The notes beneath the pieces were generated by a model. The model had not been told where the DNA came from. It did no database searches and worked only from the letters and a program-made list of their open reading frames with translations. A DNA stretch of 64,000 nucleotides, taken from positions 124,001 to 188,000 of IMG/VR virus record IMGVR_UViG_3300027770_000025; one strand, written 5' to 3'. Below are positions 4,173 through 58,522 of this stretch, in pieces (the stretch's first letter is position 1; every line of letters starts with the position of its first letter). The position numbers and the translations under genes are program-made.

Positions 4173-4658
4173 TTAATGGAAAGAAAGTATTCCCCCTTTA
4201 GAAGCTATTTCGAATCCTTTCATAAAGTTATCATAAACACTTTCATAATAACCCTTATATGGATTTTTTGATTTAATTTTTTTATGGAAGGTTTCTCTAT
4301 GCTCCATGAAATCTTTATGTAACTTATCTGACATCTGAGGCCCGAAGTTACCCTCGCAATCGGAAAAGTTTATCATTTCGTAGAATGGTTTGCCTACATA
4401 TTTCTCTTCTTCCACCCAAACCTTTTGGGCTTCAACACCAAGTGCTATTTGACTAAGAAGATTTCGGAAAACGTTATATCCAGAATACGATCCTGCTCTA
4501 AATCTACATGTTTCTGCTTCGATGTCTTCTATATACGTACCCTTCTCGATGTCTTTAGCCTGGTCGTTATGATTCTCTCCACGGTAGATAAAGATTGTTG
4601 CTTCGTCAAGATTATCTGTCTTGTTGATTTTGCTGCATGCTGAAATGTCTAATCCCAT
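4173..4658 (-). CDS. Hypothetical phage protein
   Basis: MGLDIS start, FSDCEG motif; packed ORF. Confidence 0.7.
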   Translation of the reverse strand: MGLDISACSKINKTDNLDEATIFIYRGENHNDQAKDIEKGTYIEDIEAETCRFRAGSYSGYNVFRNLLSQIALGVEAQKVWVEEEKYVGKPFYEMINFSDCEGNFGPQMSDKLHKDFMEHRETFHKKIKSKNPYKGYYESVYDNFMKGFEIASKGGILSFH

Positions 4659-4920: not shown

Positions 4921-5268
4921 TTAATAGTTTATTACATGAACCGATATCCCCTTTTCAGTTGCAAGATCTATCATGTGTTTTGTACCTCTTGATTCGCCGT
5001 CCCAAAATGCGATTAAGCAATCTGCGTAATCGGCCATTTCTTTGTTTCTAACGTATCCTGCCGCTTTACCGTGTTTATCCCAGTCGGCAGGGAATTGACG
5101 CACGCTATAGCCTTTTAAACTGGCGTAGTGCTCACCTAACTTGTCAGCTCCTCTAGCAGTACCACTTATGATCTCAGCTTCATTGGCATTTGCCAATACC
5201 TCTTCACACTTTGTGTAAAGAAGTTGAAAATCTGAGAAGTCTCTGCTGCCTGCTATTATCACTTTCAT
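4921..5268 (-). CDS. SLOG-superfamily protein (DUF2493/YspA-like)
   Basis: MKVIIAGSRDF, IISGTARGAD, AGYVRNKEM, AFWDGESRGT. Confidence 0.85.
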   Translation of the reverse strand: MKVIIAGSRDFSDFQLLYTKCEEVLANANEAEIISGTARGADKLGEHYASLKGYSVRQFPADWDKHGKAAGYVRNKEMADYADCLIAFWDGESRGTKHMIDLATEKGISVHVINY

Positions 5269-5282
5269 TTTGTTAATTTCTA

Positions 5283-5314
5283 CAATATTAATCAATACCC
5301 TCGGGAGAAAAAAA
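5283..5314 (-). promoter_or_regulatory. Early promoter copy
   Basis: T-tract..CG-N11-TAATATTG. Confidence 0.65.
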
Positions 5315-5316
5315 TA

Positions 5317-5348
5317 AAAAAGGGAAAACTTTTTATGTTCTCCCTTTT
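5317..5348 (-). terminator. Probable intrinsic terminator
   Basis: GGGAGAAC/GTTTTCCC stem followed by a T tract on -, downstream of the 5352 gene. Confidence 0.5.
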
Positions 5349-5351
5349 ATT

Positions 5352-6242
5352 TTATTTCTTAAAGATTCTGTTGATAAGATGAGTTATTATATTGTGCCTT
5401 TTAATAGTGGTATTAAGAGTATAGTATTTTAAGTGAGCATTATCTGTTGCTACCAAAGCCATTCTCTTTTTATAATTAAGAACAATATAAGGCATAAGAT
5501 TATCTGGACTTATCTCCTCTGTCTCGATTATCTCTGGCTCCATCTCGTACTGGTATATTCCTTCCTGGCCTTCAAAAGTATTAGATCCTATAACTATAGA
5601 CTCGTCATTCCAATGTAGCATTGGATTGATTATCACTGAGAACTTATTTCCAAAAGCACCAACTTTATGTATAAGTCCTGTACTACGATCTAGATCTGGT
5701 TGATTGGGATCGTTATAAACGAATTGGGGTAGATCCATTATTCTAGATCCCATAGCAGGTCCAACCATAATAAAATCAGCATCAGATCTTCTTGTTTTAC
5801 TGGCTATTGAATTAGAGATAGAAATTATTTTTCCAAATAGATCAGAATCTTCTTTTACCCTAAATTTAGGCTCATAGCCAAACCATTTGTTAGCTTTAAA
5901 AACTATGGTTGACCATCCGATCTTTTCGTTAACAGACCCAGCATACCTAATCATATTATAGATAAGCTTATCCTGCTCCCTTTTATCCTGTTCCTCAATT
6001 TCTGACATTAACATAGCCTTAGGATCTACTGAATGTAGCTTTTCTAGATCTGCTATCTGTTCTTTAGTAACTTTTGATTTAATCATGTAAGTTTCTAACT
6101 GAAAAATCTTTCTTAGGGTCTTCATAGAAAGGGTTCCAGTTCCTTCTGAGTCTTTCTCGGGGGTTTCTGATGTTAGGTAGAATATCTCTCCCGAACTTTT
6201 ATCTGTCTTATTCCAACAGATTCTATTTTTGATTTCTTGCAT
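5352..6242 (-). CDS. Protein whose C-terminal two-thirds resemble the C-terminal part of T4 gp23/gp24-type capsid protein
   Basis: TRRSDADFIMVGP..GAFGNKFSVIINP..IVIGS..GIYQY..SPDNLMPYIVLNYKKRMALV parallels the gp23 pattern RRG.GNFII...G.LGGRY.VYIDP...VGY..AG.YY...DP..FQP.IGF.TRYG. Confidence 0.55.
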   Translation of the reverse strand: MQEIKNRICWNKTDKSSGEIFYLTSETPEKDSEGTGTLSMKTLRKIFQLETYMIKSKVTKEQIADLEKLHSVDPKAMLMSEIEEQDKREQDKLIYNMIRYAGSVNEKIGWSTIVFKANKWFGYEPKFRVKEDSDLFGKIISISNSIASKTRRSDADFIMVGPAMGSRIMDLPQFVYNDPNQPDLDRSTGLIHKVGAFGNKFSVIINPMLHWNDESIVIGSNTFEGQEGIYQYEMEPEIIETEEISPDNLMPYIVLNYKKRMALVATDNAHLKYYTLNTTIKRHNIITHLINRIFKK

Positions 6243-6771
6243 CTGCGTTATTTGTTTTTGTATCTTTTGTATTAGAATTCTCTTTAGTTTGTTTCACATT
6301 AATCCAGTTAATCCTCTTCTGTAGCTGTTTATCGTGAATGGGAATAAGATCCACGGTGATAACGTCATGAATTAAAATCTCAGATGTTTCCCTATCTACA
6401 TTTCCCTTTATTGTTGGCCTGAAACTTGCTAGACCATCGGAGAATATCTTTAATGCTTCCTTTCCGTTTCTGGTATTTCTAAATTTAACAACAGCCATAA
6501 TAAAATTATCTTCAATAAATAAATCGTCTATTATATGCGAAGCCTCCTCAAGTTTAACTAAATAGTGATATTTGGAATTCCAAGTATCGTATCCACCGTC
6601 ATTAAGGAGTACGTCAACCAGTTCCCCCATAAAAAATTTCTTCTCCTCCAGAATTTTGAATATTTTATCCGCTGATTCCTTAGTGTAAATGTTGCCTACA
6701 TTATTAGGAACACCTATCTCCATAAGGGGAACCTCTCTGATAACTGATTTAGCTTCTCCTATTTTAAGCAT
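6223..6771 (-). CDS. Degenerate T4 gp21-like prohead protease homologue, catalytic His/Ser apparently absent
   Basis: NNVGNIYTK, MGEL, ASHII, NTRNGK, KGNVD, VDLIP are in gp21 order; GELxHP reads GELVDV and VSSRG reads FRPTIKG. Confidence 0.6.
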   Translation of the reverse strand: MLKIGEAKSVIREVPLMEIGVPNNVGNIYTKESADKIFKILEEKKFFMGELVDVLLNDGGYDTWNSKYHYLVKLEEASHIIDDLFIEDNFIMAVVKFRNTRNGKEALKIFSDGLASFRPTIKGNVDRETSEILIHDVITVDLIPIHDKQLQKRINWINVKQTKENSNTKDTKTNNADARNQK

Positions 6772-6843: not shown

Positions 6844-7320
6844 TTATTTTACACCCAAATAAGTTAATACCTCTTTCCATCCGGGAAATTGGTCTGTTCC
6901 AAAGTGGATATGTTCACCTCCGAAATCTGCAACACCATTGGCAATTCTGTCATCAATAAGGAAATCACCCTTAACCAATCCCTTATGGTGGCAGAGAATA
7001 AGCTTCTTGTTAACCGATTTACCTAAATGTGTTTCTACCCAAATTCTTTTCTCAGCCCATGCATCTGGGTTGCTCCAAGGTGGTGTACTTAAAATGTAGG
7101 TCTCGTACTTATCCTGCAAAGCAGCCCATGCACTTATTGCTCCTTCGATAGGTTCAAGATCTTTATATGCACTCGGATGTTTAAAGAGGCTTTGTCCCTT
7201 TATCCCTTGCAATTCTAGTTCTGCTGCTCTCTTATCAAAATCGCAGATAACCCCGTCGAGATCGATTAACAAAATAGGCTTTGTTATTTTAATGCTTGCT
7301 CTTAGCCACGGTTGGTCCAT
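6844..7320 (-). CDS. 5'(3')-deoxyribonucleotidase, HAD/NT5C family
   Basis: IDLDGVICDF, EKRIWVETHL, KGDFLIDDR. Confidence 0.9.
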   Translation of the reverse strand: MDQPWLRASIKITKPILLIDLDGVICDFDKRAAELELQGIKGQSLFKHPSAYKDLEPIEGAISAWAALQDKYETYILSTPPWSNPDAWAEKRIWVETHLGKSVNKKLILCHHKGLVKGDFLIDDRIANGVADFGGEHIHFGTDQFPGWKEVLTYLGVK

Positions 7321-11359: not shown

Positions 11360-12451
11360 TTACTTCTCTTTTAATAAAAACGTATTTGATATAGCTTTGA
11401 AAGAAACGCTCTTGTCTTTGTTTCTAATAACTATACCTTCTCTATCTGTTAACCCATTCAATCTTGACTTGTCATCAGCATATCTGATGATCTCATCGAT
11501 AGTTGGTGGTAATTTGTAATCGTAATTAACAACCGGTACAAGCTCTAGTGGTTTGTTATCAACATTTACTTTTTGTAGAAAATGCACCATGTCATCAAGG
11601 CCAAGGTATTCTTGAGTGTCTATATTGAAGATGTTAAAGATTAATACTGTTTGACCCTTGAGCTTATATGCATTACCTTGAATTCCCTCTCCGATAAGCT
11701 CACCCTGAATTGCATAGTTCTCTTCTAGAGTTCCTAATTTTTCTTCGATATGCAATTCTCTTGCAACCTTCCAGAATGTATTCCCTTCACTTTCTAATAG
11801 CTCCAGATTTCTGGAACACACCCCAAACACACCATCTCTAAAGTAGTATGTTGCAGAACTACCATCGAGCTTTTCTGTAACATAATATGGCTTATCCTTC
11901 ATGCTCTCGTATTCAGCAGTCATGTTCTGGATTCTTTCCTCATCAGTTTTTCTAATGAATCCAGGGAATCCGCCTTTAACTTTTCCTGATAATTCTGCTG
12001 GGATCGGCGGTTCGTATTTGAGGACACACATGTAAGCTGTAACATCAGCTCCCTCTTCGATAACTATTGCATCATCATAAGGTCCAAGCTGAAGTTGGTC
12101 ACCCCAAGGTTGTTTACTGATCCCGATTTTCATTTCATCATCCTTTTCCAGAACGCTTAACGGTAAGCAAAGTCCCTGTGAAACTTGCCCCTTTAATTTG
12201 ATGGTTCTTAATCTGAATCCTTCTAAGTCACCCATCTTTCTGTAAGATGATTTTCTTAGGAATTCGAAATCTTTTTCCATCGGTAAGAATGAATCGATTT
12301 CGAAGTAAACACAAAGATCCCCTTCTTTAAATTCTCCCTTCTTAGTAACAACCCTCCAAGAGTTAATTGTTACCATTTCTATTGCGTCTGCTCCCATAAT
12401 GGGCAATACTGATCCTATCCTTTGGATGGATGCTAATTTTCTATTTTCCAT
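11360..12451 (-). CDS. RNA ligase, Rnl2/DRB0094 family
   Basis: RKLASIQRI N-domain, YFEIDSFLP, TEKLDGSS, QGELIGEGIQ, REGIVIR, FKAIS. Confidence 0.88.
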   Translation of the reverse strand: MENRKLASIQRIGSVLPIMGADAIEMVTINSWRVVTKKGEFKEGDLCVYFEIDSFLPMEKDFEFLRKSSYRKMGDLEGFRLRTIKLKGQVSQGLCLPLSVLEKDDEMKIGISKQPWGDQLQLGPYDDAIVIEEGADVTAYMCVLKYEPPIPAELSGKVKGGFPGFIRKTDEERIQNMTAEYESMKDKPYYVTEKLDGSSATYYFRDGVFGVCSRNLELLESEGNTFWKVARELHIEEKLGTLEENYAIQGELIGEGIQGNAYKLKGQTVLIFNIFNIDTQEYLGLDDMVHFLQKVNVDNKPLELVPVVNYDYKLPPTIDEIIRYADDKSRLNGLTDREGIVIRNKDKSVSFKAISNTFLLKEK

Positions 12452-22134: not shown

Positions 22135-23274
22135 TTAATCTTTTTTAATCCATTTTGAATCTGCTGGAATTTCTTCTTCCTTATTCCAGAAAGGTTTTTG
22201 GTATTTCGGTTTTATCATTTTCCATATGATGTGATCGTAATTCTTTCTGTCCCACATTGCAAAACAGATAGATCTTATGCTTGGTTCAACCCCACAAAAT
22301 TCTAAGTGCTCTGCAAATTCTTTTTTGGTAGGCTCGGGATCACGATCCCTATATTTTCCATATCTGAAATAGTCATGGGTTTTACCTGCTCTTTCCCCTA
22401 TTCTATATTTATAATATTGCAAATCGCTTATTGTCTCTTTAACCCATTTATCGAACTCATCTGGCACTCTATCTAAAAACTCGTCCAGGCTCTTACCATC
22501 TTTTAAAAGCTCCCAGATATCAACGTTTGAAAAGCTGGTTAGCAACCTATGTAGCCTAACGTACTCCTCACCTTTGATCTTCATTCTGAATCCAGATTTG
22601 AATTTGATTACAAATCCTTCCGCATTGCTCTCGATCATAGATTTCAGCTGTTTGTAATCCTGAACGCCGTCGTACTTCTTAACGATCTTAAATCCTAGGT
22701 TGTTGTAGAGATTAACAAATCTAATACCTTCAAGGTGTATGTCATTGTCATGTATTCTAAGCTCGTAGCCATCCTTGTTATCAATAACAGCAAGCATAAC
22801 CAAATCTTCATATCCATAATCAACTACGATTCTATTTTCAGGGTAGAGGATCTCAAAAAGGTAGGTGAATCCAGGAATTAGTTTATCGTACCTGTATTTG
22901 CTTAGTATCTCCTTACCTTTTATTGCCTGCTCAGAAACAAAGGATCCTCTGGTAGCTAAATGCCAGTCACCTTCGTAGTGGAAAAGAATCCCTAATGATC
23001 CGTCCATCTTTTCAAACACCTCAAACTCCTCATTAGGAATTTCTTCCGGCTTGTGCTCTTCCATATTAAAGAATTTTGGAAAAGTTCTAGCCACAATGTT
23101 ACCCTCACGATCTAAAACTGTACCCCTCATATTTAGCGTAACACTATCCCAAGCTTCGCTATATTGACAATCTCTTGAATAGTTATAAATATCAAGAGGC
23201 AATGTTGGGTGAGAATTCTTAATTAGAAGTCCACGCTCAATATAATCGTTCAATATGTTTAAATCATATTTCAT
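22135..23274 (-). CDS. T4 Rnl1-like RNA ligase
   Basis: RGTVLD..FPKFFN, EKMDGSLG, ATRGSF, FEILYPENRIVVDY, EGFVI, KIKGEEY. Confidence 0.88.
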   Translation of the reverse strand: MKYDLNILNDYIERGLLIKNSHPTLPLDIYNYSRDCQYSEAWDSVTLNMRGTVLDREGNIVARTFPKFFNMEEHKPEEIPNEEFEVFEKMDGSLGILFHYEGDWHLATRGSFVSEQAIKGKEILSKYRYDKLIPGFTYLFEILYPENRIVVDYGYEDLVMLAVIDNKDGYELRIHDNDIHLEGIRFVNLYNNLGFKIVKKYDGVQDYKQLKSMIESNAEGFVIKFKSGFRMKIKGEEYVRLHRLLTSFSNVDIWELLKDGKSLDEFLDRVPDEFDKWVKETISDLQYYKYRIGERAGKTHDYFRYGKYRDRDPEPTKKEFAEHLEFCGVEPSIRSICFAMWDRKNYDHIIWKMIKPKYQKPFWNKEEEIPADSKWIKKD

Positions 23275-58343: not shown

Positions 58344-58451
58344 GATTTTTATTTTAATAAATTTTAATAGTGGAGTATTATGTTATGTCTACAAATCTCT
58401 TACCAACTTCGTAGTATTTTTCCAAAACCCACTCTAGCAATTTCTCTTTTG

Positions 58452-58522
58452 TAGCCAGGACAGGAATCGAACCTGTGTACTCCGACTTAAAAGGTCGGGC
58501 TTTACCATTAAGCCACCTGGCT
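58452..58522 (-). tRNA. trnK: tRNA-Lys(UUU), 71 nt, CCA not encoded
   Basis: Hand fold: AGCCAGG/CCTGGCT acceptor, GCTT/AAGC D stem, CCGAC/GTCGG with CTTTTAA loop, ACAGG-TTCGATT-CCTGT T arm. Confidence 0.85.

What the first reader, a model, noticed from the sequence alone, without database searches (positions are those of the whole stretch)
5352..6771. Catalytically dead gp21-like protease next to a gp23-like C-terminal fragment, outside any head module
Seen: 6223-6771 follows the gp21 motif order but has GELVDV where gp21 has GELxHP and FRPTIKG where it has VSSRG. The overlapping downstream gene (5352-6242) has an unrelated N-terminus and a C-terminal part paralleling the gp23 C-terminal region. 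Order is as in T4 (21 then 23). No GATATATA motif is seen upstream, and neighbours are early-type genes. Established: several anti-phage systems are triggered by major capsid protein (e.g. CapRel-SJ46, T4 Gol peptide/Lit), and T4 has a gp21 inhibitor (Inh). Inference: a repurposed head mini-module, possibly a decoy for capsid/protease-sensing defences, a maturation regulator, or a vertex-like minor protein.
Basis: partly seen in the sequence, partly recalled or inferred. Interest (0 to 1): 0.8.

Follow-up and report, generated by a model that had tools for sequence, protein, structure and literature searches.

The report
Exapted capsid and protease paralogues
A 348-kb freshwater jumbo phage carries, at least 30 kb from any recognisable head gene, a stripped-down copy of a T4-type capsid protein and a catalytically dead copy of the head-maturation protease. 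Both are conserved and under purifying selection, so they are working genes with a new and still unknown job, not a head module and not junk.

Summary
ORF A (6223-6771, minus strand) has the T4 gp21 / herpesvirus-assemblin protease fold and is a remote homologue of Peptidase S77. The catalytic His is Asp53 and the catalytic Ser is Arg118; only the Asp (D141) is kept. ORF B (5352-6242, minus) is not a C-terminal fragment. It is a complete minimal HK97/gp23 core that lacks the propeptide, N-arm and insertion domain.

Both are under purifying selection (dN/dS about 0.1). They occur only in an uncultured lake-phage lineage. They sit in a variable accessory island between a nucleotidase gene and a SLOG gene.

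The "21 then 23" adjacency is secondary. In relatives 0.4-4 kb of unrelated genes separate them, and either gene can be absent. In the window, A is fused by a deletion to the last 22 codons of the gene that normally precedes B.

No head genes lie in 123 kb around them. The phage's true capsid and protease genes were not located.

Small, mostly dead prohead-protease paralogues in giant phages are already reported (SPN3US gp117). A minimal gp23 paralogue outside a head module was not found in the papers searched or in the cultured-phage collection.

Function is inferred only: most likely non-assembling mimics used in conflict or regulation. The main rival is a minor head or vertex protein.

The parts
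6223..6771 (-). ORF A, 182 aa. A catalytically dead paralogue of the gp21/S77 prohead protease.
   Evidence: hhalign against S77 proteases gives 98.3% probability, E 1.2e-14. Structure matches: Foldseek to 5jbl, VIA Z 10.8, Atlas TM 0.72. There are 35 close homologues and 124 representative clusters. dN/dS is 0.07-0.18.
6292..6771 (-). Protease-fold core of A, residues 1-160. Most homologues are 151 aa and end here.
   Evidence: Alignment A2. The model aligns over residues 3-151 with gp21 residues 20-173.
6226..6291 (-). C-terminal tail of A, residues 161-182. It derives from the 3' end of the gene that precedes B in relatives (the SPFH gene in L003, a 121-aa ORF in L002). The fusion came from a deletion at the microhomology TGAAA.
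   Evidence: DNA alignment of the region upstream of B in the window against L003, L002 and L010. The protein tails are also compared. The model has pLDDT below 50 here.
6613..6615 (-). Asp53 codon, at the position of the catalytic His85 of gp21 (GELVDV against GELNHP).
   Evidence: This column is His in only 22 of 125 family sequences.
6418..6420 (-). Arg118 codon, at the position of the catalytic Ser140 of gp21 (FRPT against VSSR).
   Evidence: This column is Arg in 78 of 125 family sequences and Ser in 13.
6349..6351 (-). Asp141 codon. It aligns with gp21 Asp168, so the third triad residue is retained.
   Evidence: Asp in 95 of 125. The His-Ser-Asp triad of gp21 is taken from PMC5694885.
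6535..6540 (-). Ser78-His79, the 'ASHII' motif. It is the most conserved feature of the small-protein family and of metagenomic S77/S80 proteases, but T4 gp21 has Ala-Ile here.
   Evidence: The motif is [ST]H in 118 of 126 aligned sequences.
5352..6242 (-). ORF B, 296 aa. A minimal gp23-type HK97-fold protein with E-loop, P domain and A domain, but without propeptide, N-fist, N-arm or insertion domain.
   Evidence: Pfam Gp23 E 5.7e-10, above the gathering score. AlphaFold2 pLDDT 87.6, pTM 0.85. Foldseek matches T4 gp23 at E 2.5e-12. VIA Z 19.8 against gp23 residues 107-521. BLASTP gives 28% identity to the Flavobacterium phage immuto capsid protein, residues 277-469. There are 45 homologues at 39-97% identity. 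dN/dS is 0.08-0.18.
5697..5723 (-). The FVYNDPNQP loop, residues 174-182. It is the most conserved stretch of the B family across all allele classes.
   Evidence: Alignment A1 lists F174 N177 D178 P179 N180 as invariant. The loop has low pLDDT, about 60.
5355..5390 (-). Conserved basic amphipathic C-terminal helix of B, residues 285-296. It lies beyond the end of the gp23 superposition.
   Evidence: helix at 285-294. The VIA alignment ends at residue 281.
6223..6242 (-). The 20-nt overlap between the end of A and the start of B.
   Evidence: It is inherited from the overlap between B and its usual upstream gene.
5318..5348 (-). Intrinsic-terminator-like hairpin plus T-run, immediately after the stop codon of B.
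   Evidence: 12 base pairs, 4 of them G-C, followed by TTATTTTTTT.
4921..5295 (-). SLOG (YAcAr) gene. It is the conserved downstream anchor of the island.
   Evidence: Pfam YAcAr E 3.6e-17. It is adjacent to B in most loci and overlaps B in L105.
6844..7320 (-). NT5C 5'-nucleotidase gene. It is the conserved upstream anchor of the island.
   Evidence: Pfam NT5C E 1.2e-17. Synteny.

Best explanation
A and B are two separate accessory genes that arose by copying head genes of a T4-type phage that probably infects Bacteroidota. A derives from the prohead protease and B from the gp23-type major capsid protein. Each has been stripped of what its ancestral job needs.

Shown:
- A keeps the protease fold and one triad residue (Asp141). 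Arg replaces the nucleophile Ser and no His is present. A also lacks the C-terminal extension that full-length prohead proteases have.
- B keeps the full HK97 core. It lacks the cleavable propeptide, the N-fist and N-arm, and the insertion domain that lock gp23 into a lattice.
- Both are folded, conserved and under purifying selection.
- Both are restricted to one lineage of uncultured lake jumbo phages.
- Both sit in a recombining accessory island of nucleotide, NAD and RNA-repair type genes. No head gene lies within at least 30 kb on one side and 80 kb on the other.
- They are usually linked but are gained and lost independently.

Inferred: they act as non-assembling mimics of head proteins. 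B would bind factors that recognise the capsid-protein fold. A, with a conserved Arg in the dead active site, would bind the Glu-containing cleavage motifs or partners of the real protease without cutting. The targets could be host sensors of capsid or protease, a co-infecting T4-like phage's head assembly, or the timing of the phage's own maturation. They are transcribed with the accessory genes, not from the putative GATATATA promoters.
For: Identity of A. Loss of catalytic residues.

Identity of B. The closest sequence relatives are the Flavobacterium phage immuto capsid protein and protease.

Selection: dN/dS is 0.07-0.18 for both genes.

Accessory character:
- The island content varies. 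Relatives carry SPFH (Pfam Band_7) and a CCA-adding-type enzyme (Pfam PolyA_pol). They also carry ORFs that read by eye like NadV, Thg1, DHFR and a deoxyribosyltransferase; these were not scanned.
- B occurs without A and A occurs without B.
- Synonymous divergence of A and B between relatives is saturated, while the flanking genes have dS 0.3-0.9. This indicates allele replacement by recombination.

Distribution and context:
- No homologue in 185,579 species genomes or in cultured phages.
- No head genes in contig 91.5-214.5 kb.
- No GATATATA before A, B or the 85-aa ORF in any locus.
- A terminator-like hairpin follows B.
- A small homologue of A (P0128) lies between DNA polymerase B and a RecA-type gene in another phage.
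- The downstream SLOG gene weakly resembles the PsyrA and ShosA defence-system components.
- The arrangement is verified in independent metagenomes.
Against: - No functional or expression-timing data exist. One metatranscriptome holds only two tiny contigs, at the 3' end of B and in the SLOG gene.
- The phage's real capsid and protease genes were not found. About 225 kb of the contig was not seen. So it is not formally shown that B is a second copy.
- Head vertex proteins of the same size and fold exist (Vibrio phage nt-1, 297 aa, TM 0.61).
- A and B co-occur in all 8 IMG/VR contigs that hold A, which could reflect joint function.
- The argument from neighbouring genes is weak.
- The Arg-binds-Glu idea is pure inference.
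Confidence: 0.45

Rival explanations
1. B is a minor structural head protein: a gp24-like penton or special-vertex subunit. A is a non-catalytic assembly cofactor. Both are simply encoded away from the main head module, as structural genes often are in jumbo phages.
For: - The HK97 core is complete and confidently modelled.
- T4 gp24 matches at Z 16.1.
- Annotated vertex proteins of 297 and 317 aa match with TM up to 0.61.
- Both genes are under strong purifying selection.
- They are linked in 8 of 8 IMG/VR contigs that hold A.
Against: - A relative with the same island lacks B (L107), and others lack A (L105, L009).
- The allele classes of B differ far more than the flanking genes do.
- B has no propeptide or N-arm.
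- No putative late motif lies upstream.
- No portal, scaffold or terminase gene lies within 123 kb.
- B is closer to gp23 than to gp24 in sequence.
Confidence: 0.25
2. A, and perhaps B, regulates the phage's own head maturation. A would occupy cleavage sites or bind the true protease to delay processing. This would be functionally analogous to T4 Inh, which the T4 record annotates as an inhibitor of gp21.
For: - A has a dead active site in a conserved substrate-side architecture, with a conserved Arg at the nucleophile position.
- Small paralogues of this kind are widespread in giant phages that also have a real protease (PMC5694885).
- T4 carries a gp21 inhibitor gene (annotation).
Against: - A lacks the C-terminal region that full-length prohead proteases carry. 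In SPN3US gp245 that region is inferred to target the enzyme into the prohead (PMC5694885).
- A is dispensable in close relatives.
- No timing data exist.
Confidence: 0.15
3. B forms its own small encapsulin-like shell, a nanocompartment, independent of the virion.
For: B is 296 aa, the size of an encapsulin shell protein. It has a minimal HK97 fold and matches encapsulins at Z about 14. It has a conserved C-terminal helix.
Against: - Sequence and structure are clearly closest to gp23 (Pfam Gp23; Z 19.8 against 14.2).
- No cargo-type gene is consistently adjacent; the upstream neighbour varies.
- No Pfam encapsulin family appeared in the B scan at E up to 1.
Confidence: 0.05
4. A and B are decaying relics of a duplicated head-gene block and have no function.
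For: Catalytic residues and assembly elements are lost. In the window A is a deletion-fusion product.
Against: - dN/dS is about 0.1 over saturated synonymous divergence.
- The ORFs are intact in all homologues (45 for B, 35 for A), drawn from many samples and years.
- The models are confident.
- Family-specific motifs are invariant.
Confidence: 0.02

Closest known systems
T4 gp21 prohead protease (Peptidase S77; PDB 5jbl) and the related S80 family
   Same: Same fold (Z 10.8; TM about 0.72). Homology is detectable by profile comparison at 98.3%. The motif order is the same, the Asp of the triad is retained, and the ASHII-type motif is shared with metagenomic S77/S80 enzymes.
   Different: The catalytic Ser is Arg and the catalytic His is Asp. 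A lacks the C-terminal extension of full-length prohead proteases. It scores nothing against Pfam S77. It is not in a head module.
Diverged small paralogues of the prohead protease in giant phages: SPN3US gp117, 201phi2-1 gp206, PhiPA3 gp143 (Ali et al. 2017, PMC5694885)
   Same: The same kind of object: a protein of about 135-160 aa that matches only the protease core, is encoded away from the real protease, lacks the C-terminal region, has an incomplete triad, and has no known function.
   Different: gp117 keeps the Ser and Asp and lacks the His. A keeps only the Asp. No direct similarity between the A profile and gp117 was detectable. The two are therefore probably independent or very distant offshoots.
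T4 gp23 and gp24 (Pfam PF07068), and short vertex proteins such as that of Vibrio phage nt-1 (297 aa)
   Same: B has the HK97 core of the gp23 type. Pfam Gp23 is above threshold. Z is 19.8 to gp23 and 16.1 to gp24. B is the same length as the short vertex proteins.
   Different: B has no propeptide, N-fist, N-arm or insertion domain. It has an extra conserved C-terminal helix and a family-specific FVYNDPNQP loop. It sits in an accessory island, shows patchy presence and has deep allele classes.
Encapsulin shell proteins
   Same: Similar size and a minimal HK97 fold (Z about 14).
   Different: B is closer to gp23 in sequence and structure. No cargo gene is consistently adjacent. B is found only in phages.

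Membership tests
Peptidase S77 (T4 gp21 prohead protease) | Assemblin-like protease fold | tested here: met
   Foldseek to 5jbl at E 1.2e-4. VIA Z 10.8 over gp21 residues 20-173. Atlas TM 0.71-0.73. The model is moderate: pLDDT 67 overall, with the core mostly 79-94.
Peptidase S77 (T4 gp21 prohead protease) | Sequence homology to the family | tested here: met
   hhalign gives 98.3%, E 1.2e-14. The A profile retrieves proteins that score above the Pfam S77 threshold. A itself has no Pfam hit.
Peptidase S77 (T4 gp21 prohead protease) | Catalytic Ser (gp21 S140) | tested here: not met
   Arg118 occupies this position in A. It is Arg in 78 of 125 family sequences.
Peptidase S77 (T4 gp21 prohead protease) | Catalytic His (gp21 H85) | tested here: not met
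   Asp53 by motif alignment, or Asn57 by hhalign. No conserved His lies in the region.
Peptidase S77 (T4 gp21 prohead protease) | Third triad residue, Asp (gp21 D168) | tested here: met
   D141 is invariant in A2 and aligns with D168. The triad composition is taken from PMC5694885.
Peptidase S77 (T4 gp21 prohead protease) | C-terminal extension beyond the protease core (the prohead-targeting region) | tested here: not met
   The A core ends at about residue 151-160, whereas gp21 has 212 aa and the S80 enzymes 600 aa or more. The 22-residue tail in the window comes from another gene.
Peptidase S77 (T4 gp21 prohead protease) | Encoded in the head-morphogenesis module | tested here: not met
   No portal, scaffold, capsid or terminase gene lies in contig 91.5-214.5 kb.
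gp23/gp24 major capsid or vertex protein (PF07068) | Family HMM above the curated threshold | tested here: met
   39.6 bits against a gathering score of 24.4. Also phrog_138, major head protein, at 5e-8.
gp23/gp24 major capsid or vertex protein (PF07068) | Complete HK97 fold (E-loop, P domain with spine helix, A domain) | tested here: met
   pLDDT 87.6. 259 residues align to gp23 107-521 at Z 19.8.
gp23/gp24 major capsid or vertex protein (PF07068) | N-terminal propeptide cleaved by the prohead protease, and N-arm / N-fist | tested here: not met
   B residue 2 aligns with gp23 residue 107. gp23 has a 65-residue propeptide, an N-fist and an N-arm (PMC9958956).
gp23/gp24 major capsid or vertex protein (PF07068) | Insertion (I) domain in the E-loop, typical of T4-like capsid proteins | tested here: not met
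   The 296 residues cover only the core. The E-loop tip is about 12 residues.
gp23/gp24 major capsid or vertex protein (PF07068) | Assembles into the virion shell | not testable with these tools
   This needs virion proteomics or cryo-EM. No cultured relative is available.
Small diverged prohead-protease paralogues of giant phages (SPN3US gp117 type) | Short protein matching only the protease core, encoded apart from head genes, with an incomplete triad | tested here: met
   The description of the kind comes from PMC5694885.
Small diverged prohead-protease paralogues of giant phages (SPN3US gp117 type) | Direct sequence relationship to gp117 | tested here: not met
   hmmsearch E 0.07-0.4; hhalign probability 0.1%.
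Small diverged prohead-protease paralogues of giant phages (SPN3US gp117 type) | A canonical active protease coexists in the same genome | tested here: inconclusive
   None was found in the 123 kb examined. About 225 kb of the contig could not be read.
Encapsulin shell proteins | Encapsulin family signature and an adjacent cargo gene | tested here: not met
   Only the Gp23 Pfam hit. The neighbours vary. Z is 14.2 against 19.8 for gp23.

The most novel reading that the evidence does not exclude
B and A are head-protein mimics used as weapons or shields. One reading is that they are expressed before the real head genes as decoys that soak up host immune sensors of the capsid protein or protease. 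The other is that they are poison subunits. In that case an HK97 core without N-arm or I-domain, and a protease core that binds but cannot cut, would sabotage head assembly of co-infecting T4-like (immuto-type) Flavobacterium phages, whose capsid protein is B's closest sequence relative. The deep, recombining allele classes would then reflect an arms race.
Probability: 0.3. Interest if true: 0.85.

Novelty: new variant of a known kind. Interest (0 to 1): 0.55.

Why it matters
Capsid proteins are now recognised triggers of several bacterial immune systems. It is not known whether phages exploit copies of their own structural folds in such conflicts.

This case offers a clean pair of structural-gene derivatives to test. 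Both are selected, both have lost their assembly and catalytic functions, and both sit in an accessory island of an abundant lake jumbo phage.

The profile search also gives a count for a little-noticed family. Of 107 small S77-like proteins, 88 lack both the catalytic Ser and the catalytic His, and Arg usually replaces the Ser. This extends the single earlier report from SPN3US-type phages.

If B proves to be only a vertex protein, the interest is modest.

Tried and rejected
- DNA and protein searches of cultured phages with the region, with B and with A found nothing useful. The phage has no close cultured relative: its Dda helicase is at most 29% identical to any.
- PDB sequence searches with both family profiles gave no hit.
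- T4 gp68 as a relative of A was rejected.
- The true head module could not be located. A scan of viral contigs with an immuto + T4 gp23 alignment returned only immuto-like phages. A scan with the repeated promoter-like leader found only the two known sites in this contig. Walking the contig with seven look-ups covered 91.5-214.5 kb and found replication, repair, sugar and nucleotide genes but no head genes.
- NCBIfam and PADLOC scans of A, B and the 85-aa ORF found nothing of note.
- Bacterial and archaeal genomes hold no A or B relatives.
- A direct link of A to SPN3US gp117 was not detectable.
- The sigma-70-like promoter match before A overlaps its start codon, and such matches are no more frequent than in shuffled sequence, so I gave it no weight.
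- An earlier count of the catalytic Ser column used the wrong serine of VSSRG. It was corrected.
- Literature searches for capsid decoys, non-structural HK97 proteins and inactive prohead proteases returned only the SPN3US paper as relevant.
Full report
**What is there**

Two overlapping ORFs lie on the minus strand. A is 6223-6771 (182 aa) and B is 5352-6242 (296 aa).

The window is positions 124,001-188,000 of a 348,582-bp IMG/VR contig from a freshwater metagenome. Near-identical DNA occurs in lake metagenomes from at least 13 studies between 2017 and 2025. Contigs from three independent studies span the NT5C-A-B-SLOG junctions exactly as in the window. The arrangement is therefore not an assembly artefact.

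**ORF A**

A has no Pfam or significant PHROG hit. The evidence that it is a prohead-protease relative is as follows:

- A profile of its 35 close homologues aligns with T4 gp21 plus metagenomic S77 proteases at 98.3% probability, E 1.2e-14.
- A profile search of 1.8 billion representatives finds 124 clusters. These include long proteins that score above threshold for Pfam Peptidase_S77 and S80.
- The AlphaFold2 model has pLDDT 67 overall, with a well-predicted core.
- Its best PDB match is gp21 (5jbl): Foldseek E 1.2e-4, VIA-align Z 10.8 over gp21 residues 20-173. Herpesvirus proteases follow at Z 5-7.
- ESM-Atlas models of S77/S80 proteases match at TM 0.71-0.73.

The active site is dead by the canonical criteria. 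gp21 His85 (GELNHP) corresponds to Asp53 (GELVDV). Ser140 (VSSRG) corresponds to Arg118 (FRPTI). Asp168 corresponds to Asp141, which is kept. The triad composition is taken from PMC5694885.

The wider family shows the same pattern. Of 125 aligned sequences, only 9 have both His and Ser, and 5 of those are long bona fide proteases. 99 have neither. Arg occupies the Ser position in 78, and Asp is kept in 95. Among the 107 small proteins (170 aa or fewer), 88 lack both residues.

**ORF B**

B scores above the gathering threshold of Pfam Gp23. Its model is confident: pLDDT 87.6, pTM 0.85.

The whole chain, residues 2-281, superposes on T4 gp23 residues 107-521 with 259 aligned residues and Z 19.8. 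This is ahead of gp24 (16.1), HK97 gp5 (14.8) and encapsulins (about 14).

B is therefore a complete HK97 core of the gp23 type, not a fragment with a foreign N-terminus. What it lacks, compared with gp23 as described in PMC9958956, is:

- the 65-residue propeptide,
- the N-fist and N-arm,
- the insertion domain.

B has two family-specific features: an invariant FVYNDPNQP loop and a conserved basic C-terminal helix.

Its closest sequence relatives among known proteins come from a T4-like Flavobacterium phage, immuto. B is 28% identical to the capsid protein over 197 residues. A is 28% identical to the protease over 120 residues.

**Are they genes?**

Yes. Pairwise dN/dS is 0.08-0.18 for B and 0.07-0.18 for A wherever dS is not saturated. 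This is similar to the flanking genes. All homologues (45 for B, 35 for A) are intact and of constant length.

**Are they a module?**

Only loosely.

- Across 11 IMG/VR loci the order NT5C ... A ... B - SLOG is kept. However, 0.4-4 kb of unrelated genes lie between A and B in most relatives. One of these is an SPFH protein (Pfam Band_7 in L107). Others look by eye like a deoxyribosyltransferase, NadV and DHFR; I did not scan them.
- A is normally preceded by a conserved 85-aa ORF, which the window lacks.
- One relative has NT5C-HAD-B-SLOG without A. Another has no A in the 8.5 kb upstream of B. A more distant one has 84aa-A-71aa-SPFH-SLOG without B.
- A DNA alignment shows how the window's arrangement arose. 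A core (residues 1-160) was fused, at the microhomology TGAAA, to the last 22 codons of the gene that normally overlaps the start of B. The overlap that suggested a "21 then 23" module is therefore a deletion scar.
- On the other hand, all 8 IMG/VR contigs that hold A also hold B. A second, independent deletion has brought the two genes together in L010.

**Evolutionary pattern**

Between the window and loci L008 and L010, the flanking genes (SLOG, NT5C, orf79) have dS 0.3-0.9. A and B are saturated (dS above 1.6) and share only 45-56% amino-acid identity. This points to replacement by deeply diverged alleles through recombination, not to simple acceleration. B has at least three allele classes.

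**Context**

No relative of capsid protein, protease, portal or terminase lies in the window or in contig positions 91.5-214.5 kb. That stretch holds nucleotide, sugar, RNA-repair, replication and chaperone genes. The remaining 225 kb or so could not be read, so the phage's real head genes were not located.

The octamer GATATATA is enriched (14 found, 5.25 expected) and lies 5-25 nt before many start codons. It is absent before A, B and the 85-aa ORF in every locus.

A terminator-like hairpin follows B. One metatranscriptome holds only two small contigs, at the 3' end of B and in the SLOG gene. This is not informative.

Neither family occurs in 185,579 bacterial and archaeal species genomes or in cultured phages.

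**Prior knowledge**

Ali et al. 2017 (PMC5694885) described an "unprecedented" diverged paralogue of the prohead protease in SPN3US (gp117). They noted short counterparts in 201phi2-1 and PhiPA3. These lack the C-terminal region and part of the triad, and their function is unknown.

A is the same kind of object. It is not detectably related to gp117 itself. Another small homologue, P0128, lies between DNA polymerase B and a RecA-type gene in a 94-kb phage contig. Placement outside head modules is therefore typical of the kind.

For B, I found no report of a minimal gp23 paralogue outside a head module. Short annotated vertex proteins of the same size and fold do exist: Vibrio phage nt-1 at 297 aa and Klebsiella phage PKO111 at 317 aa.

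**Interpretation**

Shown: A and B are selected, folded derivatives of a T4-type protease and capsid protein. They have lost the catalytic and lattice-forming elements. They sit in a recombining accessory island and are gained and lost independently.

Inferred (confidence about 0.45): they work as non-assembling mimics that bind what normally recognises the capsid fold or the protease's Glu-containing substrates. The purpose could be conflict with host sensors, conflict with competing T4-like phages, or control of maturation timing. The conserved Arg at the nucleophile position fits binding without cleavage, but this is speculation.

Main rival (about 0.25): B is a small vertex or minor head protein and A is an assembly cofactor, both encoded off-module. 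Maturation regulation (0.15), an encapsulin-like shell (0.05) and decay (0.02) follow.

**Verdict**

The "module" reading is weakened. The protease half belongs to a known but obscure kind. The capsid half is a new variant. The decoy idea remains an untested lead. Interest is moderate, at 0.55.

Noticed in passing
window, for example 13212, 32276, 34480, 38022, 44663 (+) and 8585, 10171, 24592, 48247, 62334 (-): GATATATA occurs 14 times against 5.25 expected and lies 5-25 nt upstream of many start codons on the coding strand. It is a candidate phage-specific promoter or leader motif. The regions upstream of 32302 and 34513 are almost identical over about 45 nt.
   Followed up: partly
window 4921-5295 (-): The SLOG (YAcAr) gene just downstream of B weakly resembles the PsyrA and ShosA components of defence systems in PADLOC (E 2e-5 and 8e-4). 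It could be an orphan antitoxin-like counter-defence gene. In L105 it overlaps B by 4 nt.
   Followed up: partly
L003 5991-6248, L002 4596-4853, L010 9238-9498, L011 1163-1420, L107 2709-2963, L018 741-995: A conserved 84-86-aa ORF (65-81% identity between loci) always directly precedes A and overlaps its start. It is more conserved than A itself and is missing from the window. Its only family hit is a weak one to a FumA/TtdB beta-subunit domain.
   Followed up: partly
L001 16307-18284 (contig about 122-124 kb, just outside the window): The phage encodes a ClpP-like protease, a UDP-glucose dehydrogenase and an SmpB homologue side by side. SmpB is the partner of tmRNA. No tmRNA was seen in the window.
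   Followed up: no
L003 3148-10020, L009 3894-8598, L011 1921-5738, L002 1152-4603: In relatives, the island between NT5C and B holds ORFs that look by eye like NadV/Nampt, Thg1, a CCA-adding enzyme, HAD phosphatases, a nucleoside deoxyribosyltransferase, DHFR and a 626-aa SPFH membrane protein. Only Band_7 (SPFH), PolyA_pol and HAD_SAK_2 are supported by Pfam labels from look-ups. In the window all of these genes are deleted.
   Followed up: partly
window 6556-6582 (A residues 64-72): The window's A and its two closest relatives carry a 9-residue insertion (WNSKYHYLV) that is absent from all other homologues. It is poorly modelled. It contains a His that is not conserved.
   Followed up: partly
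window 4188-4572: One lake metagenome (run X4) has a contig that skips 383 nt inside the 161-aa ORF at 4173-4658. This is a deletion variant in the population.
   Followed up: no
window 11360-12451 (-) and 22135-23274 (-): There are two different RNA ligases: one with an RNA_ligase domain plus a PHA02142 OB-fold domain, and one matching the PHROG 'RNA ligase and tail fiber protein attachment catalyst'. A tRNA-Lys(UUU) lies at 58451-58522.
   Followed up: no
P0106 (834 aa, from the profile search): One metagenomic protein matches the C-terminal strand motif of the A profile in 10 separate stretches. It appears to be a repeat protein built from that segment.
   Followed up: no
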